Assembly (NCBI GenBank): GCA_002269645.1
Contig: NIVC01003606.1
Location: 1-64,000 of the forward strand
DNA length: 64,000 nt
Direction: 5' to 3'
DNA from: Macrostomum lignano
Lineage: Eukaryota
A model generated the notes under the pieces. It saw only the letters and a list, made by a program, of their open reading frames with translations. It was not told the origin of the DNA and ran no database searches. This document shows positions 4,201 through 59,393 of this stretch, piece by piece (position 1 is the first letter of the stretch; every line of letters starts with the position of its first letter). Made by a program: the position numbers and the translations under genes.

Positions 4201-4658
4201 CACGGATACTAGAATAATTAGGATGGGCCACTCAGCACATTTGCTTTTAAGCTACTTTCAGTTCAGTAGTAAGTTAAACAGAAGCATTAAATGTATTTTT
4301 AAAGCCGAGGCTTATTTATTGAATATTACTCCCCCCAGCAAGATTAAACCTTCAAACTCTCCACAGAACCTCTACCAATCCCATCCACCAATTTTTATTA
4401 CATTCCTCGGTTGTTCCAGCCTAAATCTGCCATGTACATTTCAGTGGCGCTGGCTAATGTACATTATGGCTGAACCAATTAGCAAGCTGTTTACACCTCG
4501 CCTGCAAGCTTGGGGTTCTAAACTTATCGAAGTCATTTCAGCTACCTTTATTCTTATAAAATAGCTTACGTATTCTTCTTTGCTACTGAACTGAAAGTAG
4601 AAAGCTGTTTTACTAAGTATATGCCTGAGTGGCCCATCCAGTTATTCTGGTGTCTGTG
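4201..4658. mobile_element. MITE with CAC..GTG termini and 8-bp TSD (copy 1)
   Basis: TIRs CACGGATACTAGAATAATTAGGATGGGCCACTCAG / CTGAGTGGCCCATCCAGTTATTCTGGTGTCTGTG. Flanks ATTACAAC / ATGACAAC match 7/8. A second copy lies at 19889-20350 in opposite orientation. Confidence 0.8.
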
Positions 4659-7323: not shown

Positions 7324-8555
7324 AACAGCGAACGTGGGCGTCTCCAGTGAGCATAGAAATGTCTTTTTATGGCACTGACTAAGCTGTTGGTCGTTCGTAC
7401 ACACTTATGGCCCTGAACTAGCTAGCTAATCGTATGTCTGCCTAAATATAGCACAGTACCAAAGTCCTGCCTCAGGCAAGAGAGCTTTTCTACCCAACCC
7501 AGCCAGGCATGGGAAATTGACTCCCCCGCTGCAGTCTCTCTCTCTACCCTTGTGCTTCGGGGGTTGACGAGTGAGCAAGCAGTTTGGCCTCTGAGTGCAG
7601 ATAGGCATTGCTGTGTACCACTGTACGCAGCACCCACCCACCCCTCGGCAACCCAAGAGCTGAAGGCGCTTCTTCTCAGTAGCCAAACCAATAATTCGCC
7701 ACTGAGAGCTTTTGGGGGTGGGGCAATGGCTTGAAGGGTGCCGCCTTGCTCTCCGTGGGAGGTAGGTGAGTCACCCTGCTCTCCCCCCGTGTAAACCGTA
7801 TGGTCGTAGCAAATGAAGCGAAAACGCAGCAAGAAAGAGCTTTTAAAAGAGGTGACAAGCAGAGCATGTTTCAATTTGTTTTGTTTCCTGCCAATGAGTA
7901 TGTAGTAGACCATGCGACCCTTGTTCTATAGCTGTTGCTTGCAATCAACCTCCCTATCCCTCACTATCACCAACTCTGCCACAAACTGCGCCATTTTTTT
8001 TCCTCTGTTCGAGAGAAAATCGCGAAAAGGAGAGTAGAGAGAAAAAATAAAAATACGAATCGAGACTACACAGAGATAAAGCAGAGCAGCAGGGCGCGCA
8101 CCTCCAGTGCTGCGTGCGTTGCTGTTGGTGAAAAACTACGATAGAAAACACACTTATGGCAGAGATTGCCCGGTGTGTCCGCGTCCGTGGGAATAGAAAT
8201 AGCAGTGTAGGCACTGGACAACAGTTTGTGTGTATAAATTTGCGCATTTTAATTGTAATTTTTGGTGCCTGCAAGCGTTCAACAATTGAAACTGCTGAAT
8301 GAATGCCTGTGACTCATCGGGTCAAATCATGCAGAGAATAATGCTGCCAAAGTCAAGCCCTACAGCCACTGTTAAACTGTTACAGTTTACTTTTATTCGG
8401 CTGCTACCCTGAATTAGGTCCTTCTCTGAGACGGTTGCTACCCCAAAGGCTTGTGCAATTCTTGCTCATAAGAGCCAACCCTTCAATTCAAAAAGTTTGT
8501 ACACGGCGAGAACGTCAAGGCTGATGTACAGCCTGCGGGAGTGTGTGCCTGCATA

Positions 8556-8850
8556 GGGGAGCCGTAGCCCAGCGGTCTAGCGCAGGCTCTGATGTGCCAG
8601 CGGCCCAGGCTCGATTCCCAGTGCAGTCACATTAATTTCGGGCTAAACTGGAATCTCGGCTTGGCTCTGCTCGTGCAATTAACGCCTTTGAGGGCCAAAC
8701 CCCCAAGGCACGGTGAAGTGTACATGCCTAACGATAAATAAAGTCAGGGCTGTACACTCCTGTGTGAGAGTGTGTGCCTGTGCATTGAATGAGTACGTAT
8801 CTGCGCGCTAGTGTGCCTGCTCATGGGAGTCGGCGGCGGAATGGAATGGA
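8556..8850 (+). mobile_element. tRNA-derived SINE, head type I (diverged, 3'-truncated)
   Basis: GGGGAGCCGTAGCCCAGCGG (A box) ... GGCTCGATTCC (B box), followed by the core shared with the copies at 20.9, 46.9 and 51.0 kb. Confidence 0.8.
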
Positions 8851-10185
8851 TGAAGCAGGATGCAGGAATAGAATGGATTGCTAATCTAGCCTACATCATG
8901 CCTCTAACTAAAAAATTGTGTCTGTCTGCTTACGTATCCGTGACAGCAAGACAAACTAATTGTCTGTATTTAGCTACAAGGCTACAAACTTGAAAAATGA
9001 CAAAATTACAAATAGAGCTCTGTGCAGCAAGCACTCACCTGTCTCTGTACGTCAAACAAGTGCAGCAGTGTCCCTACAGCAGTCTGTAGATTATAGCGAT
9101 CGAACCAATTTTAAACCAGTCCGTGCATTCACTAAAATGTTAAACCGCGCTTATATGTTGTGTTGCTTTTTAAGAGTCCACCGCTTGCTTGCCGCCCCCT
9201 TGCCACTTTGATTGGCTGCTGTTGGTTGGTGGGACCGAGGCTCTCAGGCTTGGCCAGTGAGGGAGGCTAGCAACTGTTTTACTGAGCCACAAAGGAGGCT
9301 CTTGCAGGCTTCGCTTTTAGTAATATTATTATTAGTAATTTTATTGCGGTAAGAATGGGGGGTCTGTTATGGCTTTATTGGCGAACCCGAAGTCAGGAGT
9401 CGGCAAGGGGAGCTGTCAGAACCCGAGGGGAAATACATTCATTCACTGTGCTTCATTCCCGTTCATTCAAGCAGTTCTCAGGTCAAGCGCCGAGAACAGA
9501 AGGGGCAGGGGTGAAGGGAGAGACCGCACAGCAGGCAATGACTTATATTTTATGTGGCCGGTCCCTGTGCACACGCGGTACACACGGGAGGAACTGGGGC
9601 GGTCCAGGCCAGGGGAGGATAGAGCTATGGGGAGAGGTAGTTCTCTGTAGTCTACTGTGCTGGCGTGGCTTAGGAAAGGCGGGCGGCTGACTCACCTATG
9701 GGATGGGCTTTGACTATGCAGGAAGCAAACGGGGGAAGGCAGCTTGCTGCTAAAAATAGTAACAAAAATCTTCCCCAGGCGAGGCCGGACTAATCCCCCA
9801 GGTGCAAAGAGGAAGAGGGAATCGGGAAGTTGTGGTGTAGGTAGGAATTGATGTGTAGACACAAGGGGAAAAGGGAAAGGAGACGAGAGAGATGGGACAA
9901 TGGGATCTAAAAGCTACACACGTCGTTACAACTCGTATTGTGGACAGATAGTGCAGCCTACCTGAATCTTTTCAGTGCAGAGCTTGGGGCGGTGGCTCCG
10001 GTTACCGTAGTGTAGTGGGCGGTGGCGCTCACGCATGCTCTTAATATGCTCACTTATAACCATATGGGTCACGCCCCCCCCCAAAGCTGGCAATAATTAT
10101 ATGGCACCCTTGGTGCTGGCTAACATATGATATGATCAAATGAATGACGAGCTTTGAAGCTGCCAAACTGTAAATCCCATTGCGC

Positions 10186-10582
10186 GCATGTGTCAGTGTG
10201 TGTCAATCAATCTGCGCGAATGTGTCAGTGCGTGTCAATCAATCTGCGCGCATGTGTCAGTGCGTGTCAATCAATCTGCGCGCATGTGTCAGCGCGTGTC
10301 AATCAATCTGCGCGCATGTGTCAGCGCGTGTCAATCAATCTGCGCGCATGTGTCAGCGCGTGTCAATCAATCTGCGCGCATGTGTCAGCGCGTGTCAATC
10401 AATCTGCGCGCATGTGTCAGCGCGTGTCAATCAATCTGCGCGCATGTGTCAGCGCGTGTCAATCAATCTGCGCGCATGTGTCAGTGTGTGTCAATCAATC
10501 TGCGCGCATGTGTCAGCGCGTGTCAATCAATCTGCGCGCATGTGTCAGTGCGTGTCAATCAATCTGCGCGCATGTGTCAGCG
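10186..10582. repeat. Minisatellite, 30-bp unit (GTGTCAATCAATCTGCGCGCATGTGTCAGC)
   Basis: Tandem array; it explains ORFs 10154-10625. Confidence 0.95.
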
Positions 10583-11126
10583 CCAAAACACTGAACATAG
10601 ATTTACATTAAAATGCCCGCTTTAAATCTGACATTTCAATTTTTCTGCATGCGGATTTTTTCATTGCAATCGAGAATAACAAGGATTTTAATTTCTTGAT
10701 GGTCTCTGACGGTACGGGTAGGAGCCTTCGCGCCTCATATTTTATTTGAAATGATAGTTTTGCGTACACACAAAGCCAAGCTGTCATGTGCTGTCATTCC
10801 ATCATTAAACTCGCTTCATAAGAATATATATTTTTTTAGTTTACAGTCAATCATGATAATGCAGATACAGGTATATTTGACACATGATTTCGCGTTTTTC
10901 TGCTCTTAAAATATTTATGTAAGGGCAAGGCGGGGGGCATTGGCAGACTTCCAATTTCCCCAGTATAGCTTGGCCAACCAGAACAAATTACTTAATCGCT
11001 GAGCGAGAAAGCAGAAGACTCAGTGAGATCGCGCGTCAATCAAATGGTGGCATTTGATTGGCATCACTGGGATATTGCTAGGAGGGATGCAAAACTCCCG
11101 TCACATTTGGCTCATGACAACAATTA

Positions 11127-11137
11127 AAAATTTAATC

Positions 11138-11172
<35 letters not shown>

Positions 11173-11200
11173 AAACAACAACAGCAACAAAAAAACAAAC

Positions 11201-11233
<33 letters not shown>

Positions 11234-11266
11234 GCACAACAACAACAACAACAATAACAACAACAA
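11127..11266. repeat. (CAA)n microsatellite, upstream flank of the ribozyme element
   Basis: Imperfect CAA run. Confidence 0.95.
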
Positions 11267-11383
11267 CCCCCCTGGGATTTACTCCCAGCCTGCTGGGTAA
11301 CCAGCAGGCCCTTTCCGGCGCCGCGTCTTTGTCGCGGGGGGGGAGGCAACGCCCGTTCTTCGGGCGGCGAAGAGCGCCGGGAA
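11266..11383 (+). ncRNA. HDV-like self-cleaving ribozyme (candidate)
   Basis: Manual fold. P1: C6 11267-72 with G-run 11336-43. J1/2: two hairpins (11273-87, 11289-308). P2: (TTCC)GGCGC 11313-21 with GCGCC(GGGAA) 11374-83. P3: GCG/CGC with L3 UCUUUGU. P1.1: C-G plus U-A. Then GCAAC, P4 CGCCCG-uucuu-CGGGCG, and GGCGAA carrying the C75-equivalent at 11368. Confidence 0.75.
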
Positions 11384-11515
11384 TCGGTCACCGCTCCTGG
11401 CTCAGGGGCGGTGAGTGTGGCTCGGTCCGGCCCTCTGTGCTCAGCCTTTGTCGCTGGCTCTGTCAGCGGTAGGGGTTTGGTACCTGGTCCGGTTATTTCG
11501 AGCTCGGTCCGCAGT
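11267..11515 (+). mobile_element. Short non-autonomous retroelement candidate: ribozyme head, structured 3' domain, (CAA)n tail
   Basis: GC-rich, hairpin-dense ~250-bp insert bounded on both sides by (CAA)n. No ORF beyond repeat-derived frames. Confidence 0.55.
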
Positions 11516-11516
11516 C

Positions 11517-11557
<41 letters not shown>

Positions 11558-11563
11558 AAACAA
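11516..11563. repeat. (CAA)n microsatellite / putative tail
   Basis: CAA run directly after ...GGTCCGCAGT. Confidence 0.95.
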
Positions 11564-11894
11564 TAAGATACGCAGTCCCGCATGCAAGGTTAGAGCAGGG
11601 CGCTTCTGATGGCGCGCCGCAGAGCCTGAGAGCGGACGAATTCCGCCCCGATGGCAGAGCGTCGCATAGCAGACAGTTAAAGTTAAATCAAGGACGAACT
11701 AAGTAATAAATTAATAATCATAAAGTACTAAATTATGTCTAAGTAGTAATAGAGACGGCAGACATTGGCCCTAAATTTCTACTTAAAGTAAGGTGAATTG
11801 CCAAAGGACTCCAACACGTCAAATCTATAAAAAAATACACAGACCTGATTTGCATGCACTAAAGGTGTAGGGTGTGAAGAACCCACCCTTAATT

Positions 11895-12580
11895 ATCTGC
11901 TCCCAACCCACTCCTCCTTATCTGCACCCAACCCACCCCTCCTTTTCTGCACCCAACCCACCCCTCCTTTTCTGCACCCAACCCACCCCTCCTTTTCTGC
12001 ACCCAACCCCCTGCTTTTCTGCACCCAACCCCCCTCCTTTTCTGCACCCAACCCCCTGCTTTTCTGCACCCAACCCCCCTCCTTTTCTGCACCCAACCCC
12101 TGCTTTTCTGCACCCAACCCACCCCTCCTTTTCTGCACCCAACCCACCCCTCCTTTTCTGCACCCAACCCCCTGCTTTTCTGCACCCAACCCCCTGCTTT
12201 TCTGCACCCAACCCACCCCTCCTTTTCTGCACCCAACCCCCTGCTTTTCTGCACCCAACCCACCCCTCCTTTTCTGCACCCAACCCACCCCTCCTTTTCT
12301 GCACCCAACCCCCTGCTTTTCTGCACCCAACCCCCCTCCTTTTCTGCACCCAACCCCCTGCTTTTCTGCACCCAACCCCCCTCCTTTTCTGCACCCAACC
12401 CCCTGCTTTTCTGCACCCAACCCCCTCCTTTTCTGCACCCAACCCCCTGCTTTTCTGCACCCAACACACCCCTCCTTTTCTGCACCCAACCCACCCCTCC
12501 TTTTCTGCACCCAACCCCCTGCTTTTCTGCGCCCAACCCCCTGCTTTTCTGCACCCAACCCCCTGCTTTTCTGCGCCCAA
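11895..12580. repeat. Minisatellite, ~24-28-bp unit (TTTTCTGCACCCAACCCACCCCTCC)
   Basis: Tandem array; it explains ORFs 11874-12647. Confidence 0.95.
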
Positions 12581-12873
12581 CCGAACCGCGACACTGAATG
12601 TAAATAAACTTTTTTGGCCTTGTGCCGCAGACACTAGTTCAATTTAAGCAAACTCAACCTAAGTCAAATATTCAACCAGCTCTTTATTATTGTCTCATTT
12701 TCTACAGTATAAGTTTGTGCAGGTTGCGTCACATCAAACGGTTTGGTGACGCAGGCAACTTTTGGAAAAGAACCATCTGTTTCAAAGTTTAGAAGGCCAG
12801 AAAGTTTTAATTGATAGGCATTGTTATTTAGCCGGGCCAAATAACTGAAATTGTTCCGCCCTTGTTACTGCTG

Positions 12874-20903: not shown

Positions 20904-21267
20904 GTTTTTTTTTATTAGAGGCAGGGGGGTTGTGTGCACCCTGGCGCACTTTAGGCGACATTGTCACACAACCGGCGAGAGGCATTACTGCCCATTCCGC
21001 CGACTCCCCTGAGCAGGCATACAAGCGCGAGGATACGTTACGCAGGCACACAATCACACAGGACTGTACAGCGGCCCTAACTTTATCAATTGTTAGGCAT
21101 GTACACTTCACTGCGCCTTGGGGGGTTGGCTCTCAAGGCCGTTAATTGCACAAGCGAGCCAAGCCGAGATTCCAATTCAGCCCCAAATTAATGTGACTGC
21201 ACTTGGAATCGAGCCTGGGTCGCTGGCACACCAGAGCAGCTGCGCTACCGCTGGGCTACGGCCCCCC
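20904..21267 (-). mobile_element. tRNA-derived SINE, head type I, full length
   Basis: Reverse complement of the 46914-47273 copy, including A/B boxes and a poly(A) tail. Confidence 0.88.
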
Positions 21268-21361
21268 TTTTGGGTTTAGGTTGCACTGAGGCTAATCGCT
21301 ATACTCAGCAACAGACAACCCCCTTAGCTCACGCTGTCACGTACCCACCGGTTTGTGATCA

Positions 21362-21645
21362 GGTGCTAAAGCCCCTGGTGCTGGTGCCCCTGGTGCTAAA
21401 GCCCCTGTGCTAAAGCCCCTGTGCTAAAGCCCCTGGTGCTAAAGCCCCTGGTGCTAAAGCCCCTGGTGCTAAAGCCCCTGGTGCTGGTGCCCCTAGTGCT
21501 GGTGCCCCTGGTGCTAAAGCCCCTGGTGCTAAAGCCCCTGGTGCTGGTGCCCCTAGTGCTGGTGCCCCTGGTGCTGGTGCCCCTGGTGCTAAAGCCTCTG
21601 GTGCTAAAGCCCCTGGTGCTAAAGCCTCTGGTGCTAAAGCCCCCT
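21362..21645. repeat. Minisatellite, 15-bp unit (GCCCCTGGTGCTAAA)
   Basis: Tandem array. Confidence 0.95.
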
Positions 21646-25374: not shown

Positions 25375-27835
25375 CAGTAGGAATACCAAGCCATTTTTCC
25401 GCCCGTCGAACTACCAAGGGAGGGGGGGAAAATTCCCCCCCCCTGACAAATTTTTTTGCTGCGCCGGAACGGAGCAACGCAGACACACAAAATTCAAGAA
25501 CACGGGCTAACTTTTTGTTGCGCACCTTCTCAAACAAGAATCAAGTCGCCAGCCCTCCGGACCGTCGAGATATTCGACGATTCTGCCAGAAGGTCGGATT
25601 TTTCCCATAAGCGCTAGTGTATTCAGTACACCCCTGTGCGCCAATCAGCACTGCGCCTCAGTGCAGCCTTGCCAAGTCTCCAAATTTCATCAGCACGTCG
25701 ACCACATGTGTCTGCATCAGCTCTGACTTCGTTGGTCACTAGCCTTCACCCAGGCGGAGCTTCTGGACCTTCAACAGGTGGCACCAAGTGACTATGGACA
25801 CTCTGATACGAATTTCTCGAGTTTCGCTGATCAAGCCTCGACAGTGGGCATACCTCAACTGCTAGGTATCCTCAGCTAGTCTCTCGAGCCTTCCATCATC
25901 ACCCCGACGCCGTCGGCACCTTCAACGGATTACACCAGGTGACTATGAACACCCTGATGCAAATTTCTCTAGTTTCGCTGATCAAGCCTTGCCAATGGGC
26001 AAGCCTCAACCGCGGAACATCTTCAGCTAGTCTCTCAAGCATTCAGTCATCACTCGGACGCCGTCGGCACCTTCAACAGATGACACCAGGCGACTATGAA
26101 CACCCTGATGCAAATTTCTCGAGTTTCACCGATCAAGCCTCGACAGTAGGCAAGCCTCAACTGCCGGACACCCTCAGCTAGTCTCTCAAGCATTCCGTCA
26201 TCATCCCGACGTCGTCGGCTCCTTCAACAGATTACACCAGCTGACTATGGACAGCCTGATAATAATTTCTCTAATTTCGCTGATCAAGCCTCGATAGTGG
26301 GCAAAAATCAACTGCTGGACATCCTCAGCTAGTCTCTCAAGCATTCCGTCATCATCCCGACGCCGTCGGCTCCTTCAACAGATTACACCAGCTGACTATG
26401 GACAGCCTGATAATAATTTTTCTAATTTCGCTGATCAAGCTTCAATATTGGGCAAACCTCAACTGCTGGACATCCTCAGCTAGTCAGTCAAGCATTCCGT
26501 CATCACCCCGACGCCGTCGGCACCTTCAACAGGTGGCACCAGGGGAGTAATGACACCTGAGCGTGATTTTTCATCATGCTCTTAACATTTCTGAAGCTCT
26601 CAAAATTTTTCAAGCACGGAAATTGCTATAGTTATGCTTGTTGCTGTATATTTATATTATTATTACACATACTTTTATGCATACGAGCTACATACATATT
26701 TTATTCGAAAAGCTGTTTAGTTTATTCAGCTATAATACTGAACCCAATGCAGAAAGGGTTATGCTTTAAAAAAGCCAGTAAATTCAGTCGGTTTTTTCAT
26801 TTTTTAATTATTATGATTCAGAAATGTTAAGAGCATGATGAAAAATCACGCTCACGTGTCATTACTCCCCTGGTGCCACCTGTTGAAGGTGCCGACGGCG
26901 TCGGGGTGATGACGGAATGCTTGACTGACTAGCTGAGGATGTCCAGCAGTTGATTTTTGCCCACTATCGAGGCTTGATCAGCGAAATTAGAGAAATTATT
27001 ATCAGGCTGTCCATAGTCAGCTGGTGTAATCTGTTGAAGGAGCCGACGGCGTCGGGATGATGACGGAATGCTTGAGAGACTAGCTGAGGGTGTCCGGCAG
27101 TTGAGGCTTGCCTACTGTCGAGGCTTGATCGGTGAAACTCGAGAAATTTGCATCAGGGTGTTCATAGTCGCCTGGTGTCATCTGTTGAAGGTGCCGACGG
27201 CGTCCGAGTGATGACTGAATGCTTGAGAGACTAGCTGAAGATGTTCCGCGGTTGAAGCTTGCCCATTGGCAAGGCTTGATCAGCGAAACTAGAGAAATTT
27301 GCATCAGGGTGTTCATAGTCACCTGGTGTAATCCGTTGAAGGTGCCGACGGCGTCGGGGTGATGATGGAAGGCTCGAGAGACTAGCTGAGGATACCTAGC
27401 AGTTGAGGTATGCCCACTGTCGAGGCTTGATCAGCGAAACTCGAGAAATTCGTATCAGAGTGTCCATAGTCACTTGGTGCCACCTGTTGAAGGTCCAGAA
27501 GCTCCGCCTGGGTGAAGGCTAGTGACCAACGAAGTCAGAGCTGATGCAGACACATGTGGTCGACGTGCTGATGAAATTTGGAGACTTGGCAAGGCTGCAC
27601 TGAGGTGAGTGTACTGAATACACTAGCGCTTATGGGAAAAATCCGACCTTCTGGCAGAATCGTCGAATATCTCGACGGTCCGGAGGGCTGGCGACTTGAT
27701 TCTTGTTTGAGAAGGTGCGCAACAAAAAGTTAGCCCGTGTTCTTGAATTTTGTGTGTCTGCGTTGCTCCGTTCCGGCGCAGCAAAAAAATTTGTCAGGGG
27801 GGGGGGAATTTCCCCCCCCCTTGGTAGTTCTACTG
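25375..27835. mobile_element. Foldback-type element: ~1.0-1.2-kb inverted arms with 151-bp subrepeats and a ~220-bp AT-rich spacer
   Basis: Arm 25375-26595 is the reverse complement of arm 26817-27835. Ends are TTAA-CAGTAG..CTACTG-TTAA. CCTTCAAC recurs at 25768, 25919, 26070, 26221, 26372 and 26523. Confidence 0.88.
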
Positions 27836-37790: not shown

Positions 37791-38352
37791 AGCGCATCAC
37801 TCTGAAACGAGAAGGGCAGGAGGCTCAGAGGATAAATTTGAGTCAGATTGGCACAGCGAGCTCCGGAGACGCAAGTCCAACCGTTTCCAAAATTGGTATG
37901 AAATTCCAGTTTGTCCAATTATCTCAACTGACTCAGGGTCGCATCTGTCGATGCATGTTGAGCGCAATTTTCCCCAGTTGAACATGAGCAGACCGGGCCG
38001 GGGCTGCTGTCGAACAGGTGTCCCCAGCTCTCTGTAATTATCTGGGTCTCTGAGCCTTCCTCCTCCAGGCCTTTCTTTATGGAAGCGCCTCAATTAAGCG
38101 GAGTCATTTTCTGCAATTTTTCTAGAATTTTCCGAGAATTTCACTTCCATCTTTGTTAAAAATTCGAAGGATTGCCCTAGCACTGGGGGAGTTGACGCTG
38201 AGGGTGGAGCAAGGCGTGAGCTTAGAAAGCTAAGAGCTGAAAAAGAGAGGATGCTGCGGGGTTTGATGAACTGTCAAAAGTCTTTACAGACAAGACAGCT
38301 GCGTCAGGAGCTGCTGCTGCTTCTGTCTTTCTTTCCTTCCGCACCGTGTCAT

Positions 38353-38840
<488 letters not shown>

Positions 38841-39297: not shown

Positions 39298-41030
39298 TGT
39301 GACTCACTAACTTTGGGAGTAACTCACAAAGTTTGAAAGTGACTCACCAAGTTTGAGAGTGACTCACCAAGTTTGAGAGTGACTCACCCAGTTTGAGAGT
39401 GACTCACCCAGTTTGAGAGTGACTCACCCAGTTTGAGAGTGACTCACCCAGTTTGAGAGTGACTCACCCAGTTTGAGAGTGACTCACCCAGTTTGAGAGT
39501 GACTCACCCAGTTTGAGAGTGACTCACCAAGTTTGAGAGTGACTCACCCAGTTTGAGAGTGACTCACCCAGTTTGGGAGTGACTCACCCAGTTTGAGAGT
39601 GACTCACTAAGTTTGGGAGTGACTCACTAAGTTTGAGAGTGACTGACCCAGTTTGAGAGTGACTCACCTAGTTTGAGAGTGACTCACTAAGTTTGGGAGT
39701 GACTCACCCAGTTTGAGAGTGACTCACCCAGTTTGAGAGTGACTCACCCAGTTTGAGAGTGACTCACCCAGTTTGAGAGTGACTCACTAAGTTTGAGAGT
39801 GACTCACCCAGTTTGAGAGTGACTCACCAAGTTTGAGAGTGACTCACCCAGTTTGAGAGTGACTCACCCAGTTTGGGAGTGACTCACCCAGTTTGAGAGT
39901 GACTCACTAAGTTTGAGAGTGACTCACCCAGTTTGAGAGTGACTCACCCAGTTTGAGAGTGACTCACCCAGTTTGAGAGTGACTCACCTAGTTTGGGAGT
40001 GACTCACTAAGTTTGGGAGTGACTCACCCAGTTTGAGAGTGACTCACCAAGTTTGAGAGTGACTCACCCAGTTTGAGAGTGACTCACCAAGTTTGAGAGT
40101 GACTCACTAAGTTTGAGAGTGACTCACCCAGTTTGAGAGTGACTCACCCAGTTTGAGAGTGACTCACCCAGTTTGAGAGTGACTCACCCAGTTTGAGAGT
40201 GACTCACTAAGTTTGGGAGTGACTCACTAAGTTTGAGAGTGACTCACCCAGTTTGAGAGTGACTCACCTAGTTTGAGAGTGACTCACTAAGTTTGGGAGT
40301 GACTCACCCAGTTTGAGAGTGACTCACCCAGTTTGAGAGTGACTCACCCAGTTTGAGAGTGACTCACCCAGTTTGAGAGTGACTCACCAAGTTTGAGAGT
40401 GACTCACCCAGTTTGAGAGTGACTCACCAAGTTTGAGAGTGACTCACCCAGTTTGAGAGTGACTCACCCAGTTTGGGAGTGACTCACCCAGTTTGAGAGT
40501 GACTCACTAAGTTTGAGAGTGACTCACCCAGTTTGAGAGTGACTCACCCAGTTTGAGAGTGACTCACCCATTTTGAGAGTGACTCACCTAGTTTGGGAGT
40601 GACTCACTAAGTTTGGGAGTGACTCACCCAGTTTGAGAGTGACTCACCAAGTTTGAGAGTGACTCACCCAGTTTGAGAGTGACTCACCAAGTTTGAGAGT
40701 GACTCACCCAGTTTGAGAGTGACTCACCCAGTTTGAGAGTGACTCACCCAGTTTGGGAGTGACTCACCAAGTTTGAGAGTGACTCACCCAGTTTGAGAGT
40801 GACTCACTAAGTTTGAAAGTGACTCACCAAGTTTGAGAGTGACTCATAAAGTTTCAGAGTGACTCACTAAGTTTGGGAGTAACTCACAAAGTTAGAAAGT
40901 GACTCACCAAGTTTGAGAGTGACTCACCAAGTTTGAGAGTGACTCACCCAGTTTGAGAGTGACTCACCCAGTTTGAGAGTGACTCACCCAGTTTGAGAAT
41001 GACTCACTAAGCTTGAGAGTGACTCATTCT
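39298..41030. repeat. Minisatellite, 20-bp unit (GACTCACCCAGTTTGAGAGT), with 600-bp higher-order periodicity
   Basis: Tandem array; variant patterns at 39601-40020 recur at 40201-40620. Confidence 0.97.
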
Positions 41031-42164: not shown

Positions 42165-42493
42165 TCACAGCGGCTCCATATCCTCGCAGTCTACCTCCAC
42201 CTTGATGTACATGGTGTCGTCTTTGATGTAGTCCAGAGTGCCGATCACTTCCAGTTCGGCGAATCGAGCCGCCCCGAAACTGGCGTTTCTCTCGCCAACC
42301 GGACGGCCGAGGAATGGTCGGTTCTCCTTGCACGTGTTGGGCTTCACCACGTACACAATGTTCCTACGGGCGGCCACGTCTTCGCATTGGTCTATCAGGT
42401 GGAAGGTGATCTTGTAGGCGAACGGCCAGGCCAGCAGCGGGTCGTTGTCGCCTTTGCAGATGCACACGAATAGGGACATGTACTTGCCACGGC
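42165..42493 (-). CDS. TRAF4-like: TRAF4-like protein, exon 5 (MATH/TRAF-C domain, stop)
   Basis: Encodes RGKYMSLFVCICKGDNDPLLAWPFAYKITFHLIDQ...YIKDDTMYIKVEVD. ccgcag|GC. Confidence 0.95.
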
Positions 42494-42529
42494 CTGCGGC
42501 GGTTTGGCGAATAGGGGACGGTTAGCGAT

Positions 42530-42825
42530 TGTGTCACTCCCTAGTGAGTGTTGTGTCACTCCCTAGTGATTGTTGTGTCACTCCCTAGTGAGTGTTGTGT
42601 CACTCCCTAGTGAGTGTTGTGTCACTCCCCAGTGAGTGTTGTGTCACTCCCCAGTGAGTGTTGTGTCACTCCCTAGTGAGTGTTGTGTCACTCCCCAGTG
42701 AGTGTTGTGTCACTCCCTAGTGAGTGTTGTGTCACTCCCCATTGAGTGTTGTGTCACTCCCTAGTGTCTGTTGTGTCACTCCCTAGCGTCTGTTGTCACT
42801 CCCTAGTATCTGTTGTGGCGCTCCC
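42530..42825. repeat. Minisatellite, 22-bp unit (GTGTCACTCCCTAGTGAGTGTT)
   Basis: Tandem array. Confidence 0.93.
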
Positions 42826-43224
42826 TATTCTCGAAAGTTCTTCGGTGCGGCATGCTCTTATCCTCAAGTAGTTGACTTCCTAGGAAGACTCCGGTGTGTC
42901 ACTCCTAATTCTCAGGAAAATTGATTTCATCCCATAAATTTTTTGTGCTCTCAGTAGTTCCATGTGCGATCATGCCACCCCCTCACTGCAGTTCTAAAGC
43001 TCCGGGCCTCGATCACCACCGCGCCTCCATCCCACTGATCCATCATTTCCGTGCAGTAATGTTTTGGTCAGGAACGTCTGGGTTATTATTATTATAAATG
43101 CTGCAGCTCTCGGTTGTGACTGATGATGCTGGCAGGCAGCTGGGGGTTGGGGGCCAGACACATCTAGGTAAACTTTTTCTTTTCACTGCACTGACCTGAA
43201 CTAACTTTACTTCACTTCACTTCA

Positions 43225-44510
<1,286 letters not shown>

Positions 44511-44532
44511 CTCCTAGGAGCAGAAGACTCAC

Positions 44533-44866
44533 TCTTGCCATCGCCATAGAGACAGGCGGACATGGCGAGCTTGTATCCGTGCCGGTTGGTGAGGAACGGC
44601 GGGCTGAAGATGGTGGACTTCTTGCCGCTCTTGGCCTCCGCCAGTTTCTCCTCGTAGTTGTCGATCTTCCAGATGAGCTGCGGTCCGTACAAGTTCTCCA
44701 GCCCGTTGATCCGGCGCTCGATGCCCAGCATCTTCTTCTCCATCTCTTGTATGGCTTTGTCTTGATTCTCGCGATTTTTGTCTCCCTGCTTGACTGCGGC
44801 GCACAGAATCTCCATGTGGTTGAGCTGCTTGGCGGCCACGTGCTCCTTCATCGCCTTCTTCTTGCC
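44533..44866 (-). CDS. TRAF4-like: TRAF4-like protein, exon 4 (coiled coil and start of MATH)
   Basis: Encodes GKKKAMKEHV...LIWKIDNYEEKL...IFSPPFLTNRHGYKLAMSACLYGDGK. ccccag| and A|gtgagt. Confidence 0.95.
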
Positions 44867-44899
44867 CTGGGGAGTCGGTTGGGCGTGCAATATGAGCTG

Positions 44900-45800
44900 T
44901 GCAATATCAGATGTAATCAGGTGTGCAATAGCATATAATCAGGTGTGCAATAGCATATAATCAGGTGTGCAATAGCATATAGTCTGGTGTGCAATAGCAT
45001 ATAATCAGGTGGGCAATAGCATATAGTCTGGTGTGCAATAGCATATAATCAGGTGTGCAATAGCATATAATCAGGTGTGCAATAGCATATAGTCAGGTGT
45101 GCAATAGCATCTAGTCAGGTGTGCAATAGCATATAGTCAGGTGTGCAATAGCATCTAGTCTGGTGTGCAATAGCATCTAGTCAGGTGTGCAATAGCATAT
45201 AGTCAGGTGTGCAATAGCATATAGTCAGGTGTGCAATAGCATATAATCAGGTGTGCAATAGCATATAGTCTGGTGTGCAATAGCATATAATCAGGTGTGC
45301 AATAGCATATAATCAGGTGTGCAATAGCATATAATCAGGTGTGCAATAGCATATAGTCTGGTGTGCAATAGCATATAGTCAGGTGTGCAATAGCATATAA
45401 TCAGGTGGGCAATAGCATATAGTCAGGTGTGCAATAGCATATAGTCAGGTGTGCAATAGCATATAATCAGGTGTGCAATAATATATATTCAGGTGTGCAA
45501 TAGCATATAGTCAGGTGTGCAATAGCATATAATCAGGTGTGCAATAGCATATAATCAGGTGTGCAATAGCATATAATCAGGTGTGCAATAGCATATAGTC
45601 TGGTGTGCAATAGCATATAGTCTGGTGTGCAATAGCATCTAGTCTGGTGTGCAATAGCATATAGTCTGGTGTGCAATAGCATCTAGTCTGGTGTGCAATA
45701 GCATCTAGCCAGGTGTGCAATAGCATATAGTCAGGTGTGCAATAGCATATAATCCGGTGTGCAATATAAAATCAGCTGTGCAATCAGGTGTGCAATAGCA
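44900..45800. repeat. Minisatellite, 22-bp unit (CAGGTGTGCAATAGCATATAAT)
   Basis: Tandem array. Confidence 0.96.
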
Positions 45801-46284
45801 TAGCTGATTGCATCAGCAAACTCATATTCCATTGTACTCAATTGTGCTTTTCGATAGTGGATCTTGAGGTACAAGAAATTTATTTTATGAGTCTAGTCCC
45901 CTTTAGTTTCCTCATTTCATTCACCCGTTAACTATTCATACGCAGTAATAACCAGCTTACATCACTGCACCCATTGAAATCTCGCATAAACAGTTCCCTG
46001 TGGCTGTCACAGTCATCAAAGTCTGATTGTTCGACTTGCTCTGTTCTCAATTTTTTCTTGGAGCTCTGTAGCCTGGCTTCCTGCCATGGGATTTTCGATT
46101 TCTTTGCTCAGCTGACAGGTGCTGTCAGGCTGAGGATTGAGTCTGATTGGCTGACTGTATTTGTCTGGGACTGCGGCATTCAGAAAGGCCTGGCTTTGTT
46201 TGCTTTGGGCGTTGGCTTGGGGCTTTCCATTTGCCTTGCTTGCTTCAGCTTTTGAACTGGCGCTGGCAGCTTCTCAGATTGAAG

Positions 46285-46898
46285 AGGGGATGGAGGAGAG
46301 AGGGGAGAGGAAAGGAGAGGGGAGAGAGGGGAGAGGGGAGAGGAGAGGGGAGAGGGGAGAGGGGAGAGGAGAGGGGAGAGAGGAGAGAGGGGAGAGGGGA
46401 AAGGAGAGGGGAGAGAGGGGAGAGAGGAGAGATGAGAGGAGAGAGAGAGTAGAGAGGAGAGGGAAGGGGGGATGGAGGAGAGGGGAGAGAGGAGAGAAGA
46501 GAGGGGGGAGAGGAGAGGGGAGAGGAGAGATGAGAGGAGAAAGAGAGTAGAGAGGAGAGGGAATGGGGATGGAGGAGAGGGGAGAGAGGAGGGAAGAGAG
46601 GGGAGAGAGGAGAGGGGAGAGGAGAGATGAGAGGAGAAAGAGAGTAGAGAGGAGAGGGAATGGGGATGGAGGAGAGGGGAGAGAGGAGGGAAGAGAGGGG
46701 AGAGAGGAGAGGGGAGAGGAGAGATGAGAGGAGAAAGAGAGTAGAGAGGAGAGGGAAGGGGGATGGAGGAGAGGGGAGAGAGGAGGGAAGAGAGAGGAGA
46801 GAGGAGAAAGGAGAGAAGAAAGGGGAGAGGAGGGGGAGAGAGCAGAGGGAGGGTAGAGGAGAGGGGAAAGAGGAGAGGGTAGAGTGGAGAGGAGAGAG
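46285..46898. repeat. AG-rich low-complexity satellite
   Basis: Purine-rich tandem array. Confidence 0.93.
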
Positions 46899-46913
46899 TA
46901 AGCTATACACATT

Positions 46914-47273
46914 GGGGGGCCGTAGCCCAGCGGTAGCGCAGCTGCTCTGGTGTGCCAGCGGCCCAGGCTCGATTCCAAGTGCAGCCACATTAATTTGGGG
47001 CTGAATTGGAATTTCGGCTTGGCTCGCTTGTGCAATTAACGGCCTTGAGAGCCAACCCCCCAAGGCGCAGTGAAGTGTACATGCCTAACAATTGATAAAG
47101 TTAGGGCCGCTGTACACTCCTGTGTGAGTGTGTGCCTGCGTAACGTATCCGCGCGCTTGTATGCCTGCTCAGGGGAGTCGGCGGAATGGGCAGTTAATGC
47201 CTCTCGCCGGTTGTGTGCCTGTCGCCTAAAGTGCGCCAGGGTGCACACAACCCCCCTGCCTCTAAAAAAAAAA
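46914..47273 (+). mobile_element. tRNA-derived SINE, head type I, full length
   Basis: GGGGGGCCGTAGCCCAGCGG (A box), GGCTCGATTCC (B box), shared core, and a 3' CCTGCCTCT(A)n tail. Confidence 0.9.
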
Positions 47274-47370
47274 CTAATCACATTTCAACAAAAAGACGCC
47301 ATAGTTTTGAAGCAGCAATAAAATTTACACAGAGCTGGAACAGTGCGAATGGCGCAAGTCCTGAACTCAC

Positions 47371-47688
47371 AGTGAACTGGCAGCCGTAGCTGGCAAACGG
47401 ACAGTTGAGGTCCTGCTTCATGCACTCATTTTCCAGGTGCTCGGTGAGTCGCTCCCTGGCCACCTCCCTTCGCTTGCACTTATTCGGGCAGGGCACCAGG
47501 AACTTAGGGCAGATCTCCAGGTGCTCGGCCTCGTTCTCAGCAATCAGGCGGATCTCGCAGAACTGGCAGTGAATCTCGCGCTTCGGACAATCGTCGTTGC
47601 GGTGCTTCTCCAGGAAGCGCTTCTCGAATTCCACGCCGCAGCGCATCGGGCAGGTCGTCATCATGCGGTCGCAGCCCTCCATGTGGGC
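47371..47688 (-). CDS. TRAF4-like: TRAF4-like protein, exon 3 (TRAF-type zinc fingers)
   Basis: Encodes AHMEGC...CPMRCG...HRNDDCPKREIHCQFC...HLEICPKFLVPCPNKC...HLENEC...CPFASYGCQFT, phase 0-0. Confidence 0.95.
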
Positions 47689-48145
47689 CTGCGGTTCGCG
47701 GAGGGGTGCTTTGCTTTTCTGGTGGGCTATTTTATTTTACTGTTGCGATTTTTTTGATTTACTGATTTGATATTTTAAGTTTACCTGTGAGGTTTTCTAG
47801 TTTACAAAATCAATCATCAGTTTCTCTAATAGCATTTTTTGTTTTACTAGTTGAATAGTTTCATTTCTTTTTAATGCTGATTTTGTTTTTCTAAATACGT
47901 AGATATAATCGTAGATATAATTAATTGATTCTTGTTCTTTGTATATAGCAGTTAGACTGTTGTTGTTAGCCTACTTTTAGTAGGCCGCATCAAACTATTA
48001 TAGTAAATAATCTTCAGACATAATGAATTTTTCCGTGTTTAATAGCCAGTCTCAATATTCACCCTAATATCAGTGAACTCATTATTCACATAAGTACCCA
48101 CAAACTCATCATTCACAGCAGTACATGTGAACTTCTCAGACTCAC

Positions 48146-48299
48146 CATGAGCTCGAGCAGCAAGCCAGTCCACGGACAGCCCCGGGCGCTGAAGGAGCAT
48201 TTAACACCAAGATTGTCCGTCTCCTTCTGAAAGGCTTTGTCCACGTAGACCTTTTCCTTGTCGATGGCCACCTGGTCCAAGGGACACCTAGGCGCCACT
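48146..48299 (-). CDS. TRAF4-like: TRAF4-like protein, exon 2
   Basis: Encodes VAPRCPLDQ...DKAFQKETDNLGVKCSFSARGCPWTG. tttatag|A and ATG|gtgagt. Confidence 0.93.
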
Positions 48300-48514
48300 C
48301 TATAAAAAGCATTGGCGTTGTCGTTAAGTCCCATACTGTATCAGAAATTCATGTGAGACAATTTTTAAAGACTTTTACTCGTAGAGTCACTCCAGAAAAT
48401 TAAAAAGAAAAGTTTTAGAGACAAGTTTACTGCGTAAACATCGATCAGATTCACATCATTCAGGGTTAAATCTTCCACCGGAACATAATTTCCAAGGACA
48501 AAATTCAAGAGACG

Positions 48515-48880
48515 CATCTCCAAAGGACGTCCTTGTAACTTCCAGGGCCACATCTTCCAAGGACGTATCTTCTAGGGATACATCTTCCAAGGACGTATCT
48601 TCTAGGGATACATCTTCCAAGGACGTATCTTCCAGGGATACATCTTCCAAGGGGTATCTTTCAGGGATACATCTTCCAAGGGGTATCTTTCAGGGATACA
48701 TCTTTCGAGGGGTATCTTTCAGGGATACATCTTCCAAGGGGTATCTTTCAGGGATACATCTTTCGAGGGGTATCTTTCAGGGATACATCTTCCAAGGGGT
48801 ATCTTTCAGGGATACATCTTTCGAGGACGTATCTTCCAAGGATACATCTTCCAAGGAGGTATCATTCAGGAATACATCTT
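48515..48880. repeat. Minisatellite, 30-bp unit made of two 15-bp halves (CCAAGGACGTATCTT/CTAGGGATACATCTT)
   Basis: Tandem array. Confidence 0.9.
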
Positions 48881-48970
48881 CCAGGGAACAAATCTTTCAC
48901 AAACAAATCTTCCGGGAAACACATCGTCAGCTTCAACGAATCCAAATCAAGGAACGAGAAGGACACCCAC

Positions 48971-49314
48971 CGCAGCAGGTCGGGCAGGCAGGAGCTGCAG
49001 CAGCGGTGGCCGCACTCCTCAAACTGGACCGGATAGCGCAGGACCTGGCCGCACACCGGGCACTCGTATTTCTTGTCCAGCTGCTCCAGGAACACCACCT
49101 CGACCTCCTCCGTGATGCCGATACCGCTGCCGACTCCGACACCGCTGCCAACGCCGCCGCCTCCACGGCCGCCATCCGAAGAGGCGGAGTGCGGCAGCGA
49201 GCGGGACTGGCCGCTGGGCCCGCGGACTGGCGGCATCGGAGACCCCGTCCGTTTAGTCGGCGTGGCCGTAGCAGAGGCTGGACCAGACGATGGGGCACCG
49301 TTGGGCTCGGGCAT
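48971..49314 (-). CDS. TRAF4-like: TRAF4-like protein, exon 1 (RING finger)
   Basis: Encodes MPEPNG...KKYECPVCGQVLRYPVQFEECGHRCCSSCLPDLLR. CG|gtgggt. Confidence 0.93.
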
Positions 49315-52000: not shown

Positions 52001-52039
52001 ATAGTCTGCCCAATCCGCTGACTCGTGAGCACATACGAG

Positions 52040-59355: not shown

Positions 59356-59393
59356 CACTGTCAACCTCAGCTACTCCCTGTTGTTGATTTCAG

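What the first reader, a model, noticed from the sequence alone, without database searches (positions are those of the whole stretch)
11127..11563. Candidate ribozyme-headed, ORF-less retroelement family resident in (CAA)n microsatellites
Seen in sequence: a ~250-bp GC-rich non-coding cassette (11267-11515) is flanked on both sides by (CAA)n. It has no Pol III A/B boxes, unlike the tRNA SINEs in this window. Its architecture is ribozyme, structured 3' domain, then a CAA tail. Established knowledge: R2 SIDEs are short internally deleted elements that keep only the ribozyme and the 3' UTR, and some site-specific non-LTR elements target microsatellites. Inference: this could be a SIDE-like, Pol III-independent SINE that is transcribed passively, self-processes, and is mobilised by a LINE that targets or generates (CAA)n. 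I know of no described example from a genome like this. This is the best candidate for an undescribed system in the window.
Basis: partly seen in the sequence, partly recalled or inferred. Interest (0 to 1): 0.85.

Follow-up and report, generated by a model that had tools for sequence, protein, structure and literature searches.

The report
Ribozyme-headed mini-retroelement in CAA repeat
A 249-base, gene-less insert inside a (CAA)n microsatellite starts with what folds as a complete HDV-like self-cleaving ribozyme and ends in a strongly structured tail region. It is most likely a short non-autonomous retrotransposon of an already known design, but whether it belongs to a multi-copy family could not be tested.

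Summary
Window 11267-11515 is a 249-bp, 67% GC, ORF-less cassette. An imperfect (CAA)43 lies directly upstream and a nearly pure (CAA)16 directly downstream.

The "ribozyme" claim gains real support. Bases 11267-11380 thread onto the full HDV-like double pseudoknot (P1, P1.1, P2, P3/L3, P4, and a J4/2 C at 11368). All helices are intact. The P1 strand starts at the first base after the microsatellite.

- My descriptor finds no other such site in 128 kb. No shuffle of 20,000 reaches its score.
- Rfam's only ribozyme hit is sub-threshold: RF02682, 25.1 bits against a gathering score of 44.
- The 3' 135 nt fold far better than shuffles (z = -4.2).

Best reading: a SIDE-like non-autonomous non-LTR element. 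It would be co-transcribed, self-trimmed at the CAA|C junction, and copied by a partner LINE into (CAA)n.

Not shown: any second copy (the cassette is single-copy in the window, and no external database held this genome), any partner LINE, or cleavage itself.

The concept is not new. Dong carries an active HDV-like ribozyme at a (TAA)n junction. R2 SIDEs and NARTc are ribozyme-headed and non-autonomous. I rate it a new variant of a known kind, of moderate interest.

The parts
11137..11266 (+). Upstream (CAA)n tract. It is imperfect, with AACA, AAAAA, AGC and TAA interruptions. It is the presumed pre-existing target microsatellite.
   Evidence: TRF period 3, 43.3 copies, 88% matches; sequence read.
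11267..11380 (+). Predicted HDV-like self-cleaving ribozyme (114 nt). The predicted cleavage site lies between A11266 and C11267.
   Evidence: Descriptor match is unique in 128 kb. Composite helix score is 25.0, against a maximum of 22.5 in 20,000 shuffles. Rfam RF02682 gives 25.1 bits, below the gathering score of 44. The MFE fold pairs 11267-72 with the G run.
11267..11272 (+). P1 5' strand, CCCCCC. It pairs with G11336-G11341.
   Evidence: duplex energy -15.3 kcal/mol.
11273..11308 (+). J1/2 insertion holding two hairpins: (C)UGGGA-UUUAC-UCCCA(G) at 11272-11288, and CCUGCUGG-GUAA-CCAGCAGG at 11289-11308.
   Evidence: MFE structures. Long J1/2 regions are documented for R2 ribozymes, where P1 and P1' lie 23 to more than 700 nt apart (PMC3774820).
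11309..11315 (+). Alternative, weaker P1 strand CCCUUUC, with three G-U pairs. This is the register used by the Rfam alignment.
   Evidence: -8.4 kcal/mol, against -15.3 for the junction P1.
11315..11321 (+). P2 5' strand, CCGGCGC. It pairs with GCGCCGG at 11374-11380: 7 Watson-Crick pairs, extendable to 9.
   Evidence: -15.6 kcal/mol. The Rfam covariance model does not score this helix, so it counts as independent support.
11323..11335 (+). P3 (GCG/CGC) enclosing L3 (UCUUUGU, 11326-11332).
   Evidence: Compare the conserved R2 motif CCUCCUCGUGG quoted in PMC5035012.
11336..11343 (+). Run of eight G. G11336-41 form the P1 3' strand. G11342 and G11343 form P1.1 with U11328 and C11327.
11350..11366 (+). 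P4 hairpin, CGCCCG-UUCUU-CGGGCG.
   Evidence: -10.7 kcal/mol.
11367..11373 (+). J4/2, GCGAAGA. C11368 sits at the position of the catalytic cytosine.
   Evidence: Aligned to CGGCUAAGA of the RF02682 consensus.
11374..11380 (+). P2 3' strand, GCGCCGG.
11381..11515 (+). Structured 3' domain. It has hairpin H1 (11385-11417, with a 12-bp perfect stem), a long hairpin H2 (11419-11504), and then 11 unpaired nt before the tail. It is the presumed binding site for the partner reverse transcriptase.
   Evidence: MFE -67.9 kcal/mol against a shuffle mean of -52.0; z = -4.2; 0 of 500 shuffles fold as well.
11516..11563 (+). Downstream (CAA)16, nearly pure. It is the presumed element tail and/or the remainder of the target.
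   Evidence: TRF 16 copies, 95% matches.

Best explanation
The cassette is one copy of a short, ORF-less, non-autonomous non-LTR retroelement built like an R2 SIDE: a 5' HDV-like ribozyme joined to a structured 3' end, but sitting in a (CAA)n microsatellite instead of rDNA.

Proposed cycle:
1. The copy has no promoter of its own and is transcribed by read-through from upstream (inferred).
2. The ribozyme (11267-11380) folds and cuts between A11266 and C11267. This removes the upstream repeat and defines the RNA 5' end. The fold is shown in silico; cleavage is inferred.
3. The reverse transcriptase/endonuclease of an autonomous LINE recognises the 3' domain (11381-11515) plus the (CAA)n tail in trans. 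That LINE would either target (CAA)n or end in (CAA)n (inferred).
4. The endonuclease nicks a (CAA)n/(TTG)n tract. The RNA tail anneals to the nicked strand, and target-primed reverse transcription copies the element. This leaves (CAA)n on both sides (inferred from the flanks).

Which LINE clade is the partner (an RLE type such as R4/Dong, HERO or NeSL relatives, or an RTE/RTEX type with a repeat tail) cannot be decided from this window.
For: - Flanks: (CAA)n lies immediately on both sides. The upstream tract is degenerate and the downstream tract is nearly pure, as expected if the downstream tract is younger.
- Complete HDV-like topology on the + strand only: P1 6 bp all G-C, P2 7-9 bp, P3 3 bp, a 7-nt L3 UCUUUGU, P1.1, P4 6 bp, and a C in J4/2.
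- Uniqueness: it is the only descriptor hit in both strands of the window. The loose descriptor is expected 0.27 times per shuffled window. The real site scores 25.0, against a maximum of 22.5 in 20,000 composition-matched shuffles and 21 in 40 window shuffles. The descriptor recovers the RF02682 consensus as a positive control.
- Rfam: the best and only ribozyme hit is RF02682, at 25.1 bits, with AGGCAACG and CGGC.AAGA matching the consensus. The P2 helix, which that model does not score, is perfect.
- Boundary: the P1 strand CCCCCC begins at the first base after the repeat. The 5' boundary of the insert therefore equals the predicted cleavage site, as in Dong, R4 and Drosophila R2 (PMC3774820).
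- Strand asymmetry: fold z = -4.45 on the + strand and -2.82 on the - strand.
- 3' domain: z = -4.2.
- No coding signal, no rRNA, tRNA or other Rfam family.
- Precedents for each step: PMC3414825, PMC3774820, PMC3383444, PMC4640811, PMC3747384.
Against: - Only one copy is visible, and none could be retrieved elsewhere. Mobility and family status are therefore unproven.
- None of the 41 larger ORFs I scanned carried a reverse-transcriptase or endonuclease domain. I did not scan the other 110 of the 151 candidate ORFs.
- The Rfam score is well below the gathering threshold, and no metazoan HDV-like family matched.
- I wrote my descriptor after seeing the sequence.
- The first P1 pair is C-G, not the G-U wobble I recall as typical of HDV-like ribozymes (my own knowledge, not checked here).
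- J1.1/4 is a little longer than the 0-2 nt reported for R2.
- A second possible P1 strand (11309-11315) makes the cleavage site ambiguous in principle.
- The annotated neighbours (an Ets exon and fibrinogen-domain exons) are on the opposite strand, so no co-oriented host transcript is evident for this copy.
Confidence: 0.55

Rival explanations
1. One-off relic. A full-length ribozyme-bearing LINE inserted into this (CAA)n tract and later lost its interior by a local deletion. The cassette would be a dead remnant, not a propagating non-autonomous family.
For: The cassette is single-copy in the window. SIDEs are thought to arise by exactly such deletions (PMC3414825), so every SIDE starts as a one-off. 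No second copy was found anywhere I could search.
Against: All ribozyme helices and both long 3' hairpins are free of mismatches. That fits recent copying or selection better than an old relic. The absence of other copies is uninformative, because the genome was not searchable.
Confidence: 0.2
2. No ribozyme. The HDV-like fit is a chance property of a G+C-rich, hairpin-rich insert of unknown origin (for example a fragment captured during repair) that happens to interrupt a microsatellite.
For: The Rfam hit is below threshold: 25.1 against 44 bits, and it is not reported at E<=1 in the whole-window search. The loose descriptor occurs 0.27 times per shuffled window. The descriptor was designed post hoc.
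Against: None of 20,000 shuffles reaches the real composite score. P2, which the covariance model does not score, is a perfect 7-bp helix at the right place. The P1 strand coincides with the exact insert boundary, and the orientation places the ribozyme at the 5' end and the repeat tail at the 3' end.
Confidence: 0.1
3. A cellular (domesticated or stand-alone) HDV-like ribozyme that acts on a host transcript, in the way the intronic CPEB3 ribozyme does, and that has nothing to do with retrotransposition.
For: HDV-like ribozymes also occur in introns and intergenic regions without recognisable transposon context (PMC6765202).
Against: The precise embedding in a microsatellite, the structured 3' domain and the repeat tail all fit a retroelement. 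The neighbouring genes are on the other strand.
Confidence: 0.07
4. A Pol III-driven SINE, or an ordinary 5'-truncated LINE 3' end with a simple-repeat tail, as described for RTE fragments in Lepidoptera.
For: Truncated RTE 3' ends flanked by simple repeats are common and are often mistaken for SINEs (PMC2887409). There is an A-box-like 11-mer at 11398-11408.
Against: No A/B box pair lies near the 5' end, and the B-like match is at chance level. ARAGORN and Rfam find no tRNA, 5S or 7SL similarity. A random truncation point would not coincide with the start of a complete ribozyme.
Confidence: 0.05
5. A protein-coding exon with poly-Gln flanks. Frame +2 is open from 11258 to 11563.
For: There is a 102-codon stop-to-stop open frame, in which CAA reads as Gln.
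Against: There is no start codon before 11411 in that frame. No homologue appears among 5.8 billion clusters or 1.84 billion representatives, in the frame searched on either strand. At 67% GC, about one of the six frames is expected to stay open over 83 codons by chance. A second frame, on the other strand, is also nearly open.
Confidence: 0.03

Closest known systems
R2 SIDEs (Short Internally Deleted Elements) of Drosophila (PMC3414825)
   Same: Both are ORF-less. A 5' HDV-like ribozyme is joined directly to a 3' end that the partner's reverse transcriptase would recognise. Both have no promoter of their own and are a few hundred bases long.
   Different: SIDEs sit at the R2 (or R1) site of 28S rDNA, are co-transcribed by Pol I, and share both ends with a known autonomous R2. 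Here the flanks are (CAA)n, no partner is known, and only one copy has been seen.
Dong (R4 clade) of Bombyx mori (PMC3774820)
   Same: Both are non-LTR elements resident in a trinucleotide microsatellite, with an HDV-like ribozyme at the 5' end. In Dong the cut is experimentally at the repeat/element junction, which is exactly the geometry predicted here.
   Different: Dong is autonomous (it encodes RT plus a restriction-like endonuclease) and targets (TAA)n. The Dong 5' end quoted in that paper's primer (GCTCCCTAAAATCCTACC) shows no evident similarity to CCCCCCTGGGATTTACTCCC. This cassette has no ORF.
NARTc / Pr77-bearing non-autonomous elements of trypanosomatids (PMC3383444, PMC4035085)
   Same: NARTc, like L1Tc, carries the HDV-like ribozyme L1TcRz at the 5' end of its RNA.
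   Different: In NARTc the same 77 nt also act as an internal promoter. Its partner is the L1Tc/ingi clade, and the host is a protist. It has no microsatellite residence.
Microsatellite-specific or repeat-tailed LINEs: Togen (TG)n, some HERO families, and algal L1/RTEX elements with (CAA)n tails (PMC4640811; PMC3747384 Table 3)
   Same: They show that LINEs can target a simple repeat or end in one, including (CAA)n. This is the activity required of the unseen partner.
   Different: These are autonomous elements. None is reported there with a ribozyme-headed ORF-less derivative.
Rfam RF02682 (HDV ribozyme from F. prausnitzii)
   Same: It has the same fold class. The core strings AGGCAACG and CGGC.AAGA and the L3 pattern UCU..GU align.
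   Different: It is a bacterial family. The score is 25.1 bits against a gathering score of 44. Here J1/2 carries a 36-nt two-hairpin insertion and P1 is a C/G homopolymer helix.

Membership tests
HDV-like self-cleaving ribozyme (fold class) | Nested double pseudoknot: P1 (6-7 bp) directly 3' of P3', P2 (at least 5 bp) closing the fold, a 3-bp P3, a 2-bp P1.1 between L3 and the bases after P1', and a P4 region. | tested here: met
   Every helix is present without a mismatch at 11267-11380. The helix sizes fall within the ranges given for R2 ribozymes (PMC3774820 section 'The R2 ribozyme').
HDV-like self-cleaving ribozyme (fold class) | Conserved core nucleotides: a catalytic C in J4/2 and conserved L3 positions. 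| tested here: met
   C11368 in GCGAAGA aligns with the C of CGGCUAAGA. L3 UCUUUGU aligns with UCUaCGU of RF02682 and resembles the UCCUCGU of R2 (PMC5035012).
HDV-like self-cleaving ribozyme (fold class) | Score at or above a curated Rfam family threshold. | tested here: not met
   There is no gathering-level hit in the window. The best hit is RF02682 at 25.1 bits against 44. No other HDV-like family is reported at E<=10.
HDV-like self-cleaving ribozyme (fold class) | Site-specific self-cleavage at the base of P1. | not testable with these tools
   This needs an in vitro co-transcriptional cleavage assay.
R2 SIDE | A 5' ribozyme joined to a 3' UTR with the ORF deleted. | tested here: inconclusive
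   A ribozyme fold followed by a structured non-coding 3' part is present. Whether the two parts derive from one autonomous element cannot be checked.
R2 SIDE | Insertion at the R2/R1 site of the 28S rRNA gene. | tested here: not met
   The flanks are (CAA)n. No rRNA match occurs anywhere in the window.
R2 SIDE | Multiple copies with TPRT-type 5' junction variation and an autonomous partner sharing the ends. | not testable with these tools
   The cassette is single-copy in the window. The host genome is absent from all searchable collections.
R4/Dong-clade derivative | Residence in a simple repeat with a ribozyme cut at the repeat/element junction. | tested here: met
   (CAA)n lies on both sides, and P1 starts at 11267, the first non-repeat base. 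The cleavage site is predicted only.
R4/Dong-clade derivative | Sequence relationship to an R4-clade RT/RLE element (shared 5' and/or 3' ends). | not testable with these tools
   No R4-clade sequence or host genome was available. The 18-nt Dong 5' end quoted in PMC3774820 is not similar by eye.
tRNA-derived Pol III SINE | A and B boxes in a tRNA-like head at the 5' end. | tested here: not met
   The only matches are a 1-mismatch A-like site at +132 and a chance-level B-like site at +208. ARAGORN finds nothing. The genuine SINE copies in the window do have both boxes in their tRNA-like head, at +31 and +74 of the aligned repeat block.

The most novel reading that the evidence does not exclude
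The cassette represents an undescribed, active family of ribozyme-processed, ORF-less retroelements that live specifically in (CAA)n microsatellites of an invertebrate genome and are mobilised by a still unknown microsatellite-specific LINE. It would be the first SIDE-type parasite documented outside rDNA. Its ribozyme lineage is not captured by any Rfam family.
Probability: 0.35. Interest if true: 0.55.

Novelty: new variant of a known kind. Interest (0 to 1): 0.4.

Why it matters
If a family exists, the SIDE strategy (keep only the self-trimming 5' ribozyme and the 3' recognition module) is not confined to rDNA-specific R2/R1 elements. It would also work for microsatellite-targeting LINEs.

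It would also give a compact natural RNA of about 250 nt that carries everything needed in cis for ribozyme processing and target-primed reverse transcription into a simple repeat. That is of interest to people studying or engineering site-specific non-LTR insertion.

Finally, it adds an HDV-like ribozyme with a homopolymeric P1 and a two-hairpin J1/2 insertion that current Rfam models miss.

If it is only a single relic, it is an ordinary transposon remnant.

Tried and rejected
Searches for further copies (all negative):
- BLASTN of the cassette and both unique flanks against the window gave self-hits only.
- The cassette translated in the open + frame, against 5.8 billion protein clusters, gave nothing.
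- The nearly open - frame, against 1.84 billion representatives with HMMER, gave nothing.
- A 30-mer in IMG/VR gave nothing.
- A 20-mer in JGI metagenomes gave one hit.
- A core pattern in GTDB genomes gave nothing.
- Full-text searches for cassette, satellite and SINE sequence strings gave nothing.

Identifying the organism:
- The TRAF exon had no relative in the protein collection. It matches human TRAF4 only distantly (E 3e-07) in the PDB.
- I conclude only that the host is a metazoan, probably an invertebrate, with an unannotated genome.

Looking for a partner LINE:
- A Pfam scan of 41 of the larger non-repeat ORFs found Ets, fibrinogen-C, 7tm_3 and TRAF domains, but no RT or endonuclease. 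The other 110 ORFs of the set were not scanned.

Other checks:
- Rfam at gathering thresholds found nothing in the window. tRNA/tmRNA search found none.
- I rejected the coding-exon reading, the Pol III SINE reading and the rRNA-fragment reading for the reasons given under the rival explanations.
- Two papers I wanted could not be opened: Webb & Luptak 2011 and Ruminski et al. 2011. The published HDV-like descriptor was therefore not available, and I wrote my own.

Full report
**1. What is there**

The sequence reads as follows: unique AT-rich DNA, then an interrupted (CAA)n tract, then a G+C-rich block, then a clean (CAA)16, then unique DNA.
- TRF reports the two tracts at 11137-11267 (43.3 units, 88% matches) and 11516-11563 (16 units, 95% matches).
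- The block between them, 11267-11515, is 249 bp and 67% GC.
- This is the only (CAA)>=5 or (TTG)>=5 locus in the 64 kb.
- The block has no second copy in the window, and neither do its unique flanks.
The word "family" in the title is not an observation.

**2. Setting**

The window is metazoan nuclear DNA.
- 40% of it (25.7 kb) is tandem repeat.
- A Pfam scan of 41 of the larger non-repeat ORFs finds an Ets exon (about 4.6-5.4 kb), fibrinogen C-terminal domain exons (12.9-14.1 kb), a class C GPCR exon (about 30.6-31.0 kb), and a TRAF gene with RING, TRAF zinc-finger and MATH exons (42-49.3 kb). All are on the minus strand. No reverse transcriptase or endonuclease was seen.
- The cassette lies on the plus strand between the Ets and fibrinogen-domain exons.
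Four copies of a ~370-bp element are 82-97% alike. Each has a head carrying TAGCCCAGCGG (A box) and GGCTCGATTCC (B box) and an A-rich tail. ARAGORN and Rfam do not call them.

**3. The 5' half folds as an HDV-like ribozyme**

Rfam at curated thresholds finds nothing in the window. In permissive mode, the best and only ribozyme match in the region is RF02682, an HDV-like ribozyme family, at 11309-11381 on the plus strand. It scores 25.1 bits against a gathering score of 44. The E-value is 0.028 for a 1-kb search and 0.004 for the 141-nt search. It does not reach E<=1 when the whole window is searched. On its own that would be weak.

The alignment is nevertheless instructive. The core strings AGGCAACG and CGGC.AAGA and the L3 loop align to the consensus. 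The model does not score the pseudoknotted P2 helix, and P2 is perfect here.

By direct reading, every element of the double pseudoknot is present:

| Element | Sequence | Coordinates |
|---|---|---|
| P1 | CCCCCC / GGGGGG | 11267-72 / 11336-41 |
| P2 | CCGGCGC / GCGCCGG | 11315-21 / 11374-80 |
| P3 | GCG / CGC | 11323-25 / 11333-35 |
| L3 | UCUUUGU | 11326-32 |
| P1.1 | C11327-G11343 and U11328-G11342 | |
| P4 | CGCCCG-UUCUU-CGGGCG | 11350-66 |
| J4/2 | GCGAAGA, with C11368 at the catalytic position | 11367-73 |

The L3 loop resembles the UCCUCGU inside the most conserved R2 motif, CCUCCUCGUGG (PMC5035012). The helix sizes fall within those described for R2 ribozymes (PMC3774820).

**4. Is the fit more than chance?**

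I coded a descriptor from these published features.
- It recovers the RF02682 consensus as a positive control.
- It hits only this locus on either strand of the window.
- In its loosest form it is not very specific. It gives 0.27 loci per dinucleotide-shuffled window, and 10 of 5,000 shuffled cassettes match.
- A second script scored the helices by extending each one as far as it pairs. The real site scores 25.0. The best of 20,000 composition-matched shuffles scores 22.5, and the best of 40 shuffled windows scores 21.

The descriptor was written after I had seen the sequence, so these numbers are indicative and not a clean P value. Two further facts are independent of the descriptor.
- The unconstrained MFE fold pairs the first six bases of the cassette with the G run.
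- The plus strand folds better relative to shuffles (z = -4.45) than the minus strand (z = -2.82).

**5. Where would it cut?**

Two C/U-rich strands can pair with the G run.
- CCCCCC(U) at 11267 gives a duplex of -15.3 kcal/mol.
- CCCUUUC at 11309 gives -8.4 kcal/mol and contains three G-U pairs.

The first strand is much the more stable, and it starts at the first base after the microsatellite. If the second were the functional P1, processed RNA would lack bases 11267-11308, and daughter copies would not carry them. Their presence in this genomic copy favours cleavage between A11266 and C11267.

That places two hairpins (11272-11288 and 11289-11308) in J1/2. Such insertions are normal in R2 ribozymes, where P1 and P1' are 23 to more than 700 nt apart. 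Duplicate P1 candidates are also discussed there as a route by which cleavage sites shift (PMC3774820).

**6. The 3' half**

Bases 11381-11515 form a 12-bp perfect hairpin (within 11385-11417) and a long compound hairpin (11419-11504). Eleven unpaired bases precede the (CAA)n tail.
- The MFE is -67.9 kcal/mol against a shuffle mean of -52.0. That gives z = -4.2, and none of 500 shuffles folds as well.
- The domain has no Rfam match and no similarity elsewhere in the window.
- GGTCCG occurs three times. Twice it appears as GCTCGGTCCG (11420-29 and 11502-11); the third occurrence is at 11486-91.
- An A-box-like 11-mer (11398-11408, one mismatch) and a B-like 11-mer (11474-84, two mismatches) are marginal and at chance level respectively, and they are far from the 5' end. 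I therefore agree that there is no Pol III head.

**7. Coding potential**

One plus-strand frame is open through the cassette and reads the flanks as poly-Gln. One minus-strand frame is nearly open. At 67% GC this is expected by chance. Neither translation has any relative among 5.8 billion clusters or 1.84 billion representatives. I treat the cassette as non-coding.

**8. Most likely mechanism**

The architecture is a self-trimming 5' ribozyme, a structured 3' module and a simple-repeat tail, with the same repeat on both sides. This is the architecture of a non-autonomous non-LTR retroelement.

Proposed steps:
1. Read-through transcription.
2. Ribozyme cleavage at the CAA|C junction.
3. Recognition of the 3' module and tail by the protein of a partner LINE.
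4. A nick in a (CAA)n/(TTG)n tract, annealing of the RNA tail, and target-primed reverse transcription.

Shown here: the flanks, the fold, its strand and its position. Inferred: cleavage, trans-mobilisation, and the existence of a partner. The degenerate upstream tract and the clean downstream tract fit an older target and a younger tail, but they do not prove it.

**9. Comparison with what is known**

- Dong, an R4-clade element of Bombyx mori that lives in (TAA)n, has an HDV-like ribozyme shown in vitro to release a 21-nt (TAA)7 upstream product. It therefore cuts at the repeat/element junction (PMC3774820).
- R2 SIDEs are ORF-less fusions of the R2 ribozyme to an R2 or R1 3' end (PMC3414825).
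- NARTc, like L1Tc, carries the HDV-like ribozyme L1TcRz at the 5' end of its RNA (PMC3383444). The Pr77 region that holds this ribozyme is shared by retrotransposons of the whole trypanosomatid L1Tc/ingi clade (PMC4035085).
- Microsatellite-specific RLE LINEs (Togen on (TG)n, and some HERO families) are documented (PMC4640811). So are LINEs with (CAA)n tails (PMC3747384 Table 3).

What my literature searches did not turn up is the combination: a SIDE-like, ORF-less derivative resident in a microsatellite.

It is not an R2 SIDE in the strict sense, because it has no rDNA context. Membership of the R4 clade cannot be tested without the partner.

**10. What could not be done**

The decisive test (copy number and flanks genome-wide, and a long element sharing the ends) was out of reach. 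Neither the TRAF exon nor the cassette translations have any match in the protein collections, which indicates that the host genome is not represented there. The DNA pattern scans returned nothing relevant either. The single metagenome hit is a chance 20-mer on a bacterial contig.

**11. Verdict**

The ribozyme-headed, SIDE-like anatomy is well supported in silico. Family status and mobilisation remain untested. The novelty claim is too strong.
- I put 0.55 on a genuine non-autonomous retroelement of this design and 0.2 on a one-off deletion relic of a ribozyme-bearing LINE. The rest is shared among chance structure, a cellular ribozyme, a Pol III SINE or truncated LINE, and a coding exon.
- Interest is moderate (0.4): a new variant of a known kind.

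Noticed in passing
window 8552-8836 (+), 20905-21274 (-), 46893-47273 (+), 51023-51412 (+): There are four copies (82-97% alike) of a ~370-bp tRNA-derived SINE with clear A and B boxes and an A-rich tail. ARAGORN and Rfam miss them. Three copies directly abut minisatellite arrays (46283-46898; 50647-51043 and 51414-52004; 21362-21643), as if the arrays grew from or next to the SINE ends.
   Followed up: partly
window 25767-26557 and 26869-27494: Two arrays of the same 151-bp unit (5.2 and 4.1 copies) lie in inverted orientation, about 310 bp apart. This is a large palindromic arrangement of unknown origin.
   Followed up: no
window 53480-59356: A 5.9-kb satellite has a 41-bp C-rich unit (146 copies, GC skew about -0.7). 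Overall, 25.7 kb of the 64 kb is tandem repeat, including (AACT)n at 43228-44507, a (TAC)-based array at 38352-38840, and a 20-bp array at 39299-41026.
   Followed up: no
window 4207-4658 and 20321-19889: A ~450-bp dispersed repeat occurs in inverted orientation (82% identity). It is unclassified.
   Followed up: no
window 42168-49335 (- strand): A TRAF-family gene is spread over exons encoding a RING finger (48865-49335), TRAF zinc fingers (47281-47736) and a MATH domain (44501-44938, 42168-42521). Its introns are filled with minisatellites and a SINE. It matches human TRAF4 only distantly (E 3e-07) and has no relative in the protein collection. This suggests an unannotated invertebrate genome.
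   Followed up: partly
window 11575-11685: A single-copy G+C-rich stretch of about 110 nt lies immediately after the downstream (CAA)n. It has no similarity to the cassette or to anything else in the window. Its origin is unexplained.
   Followed up: no
window 11420-11429, 11486-11491, 11502-11511: The motif GGTCCG recurs three times in the cassette's 3' domain, twice as GCTCGGTCCG. It could be a repeated protein-binding site or simply a by-product of the hairpins.
   Followed up: no
window 10181-10583 and 11896-12582: The cassette locus is bracketed within about 1 kb on each side by minisatellites: a 32-bp unit x12.6 upstream and a 22-bp C-rich unit x29.6 downstream. The whole intergenic region is repeat-dense.
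   Followed up: no
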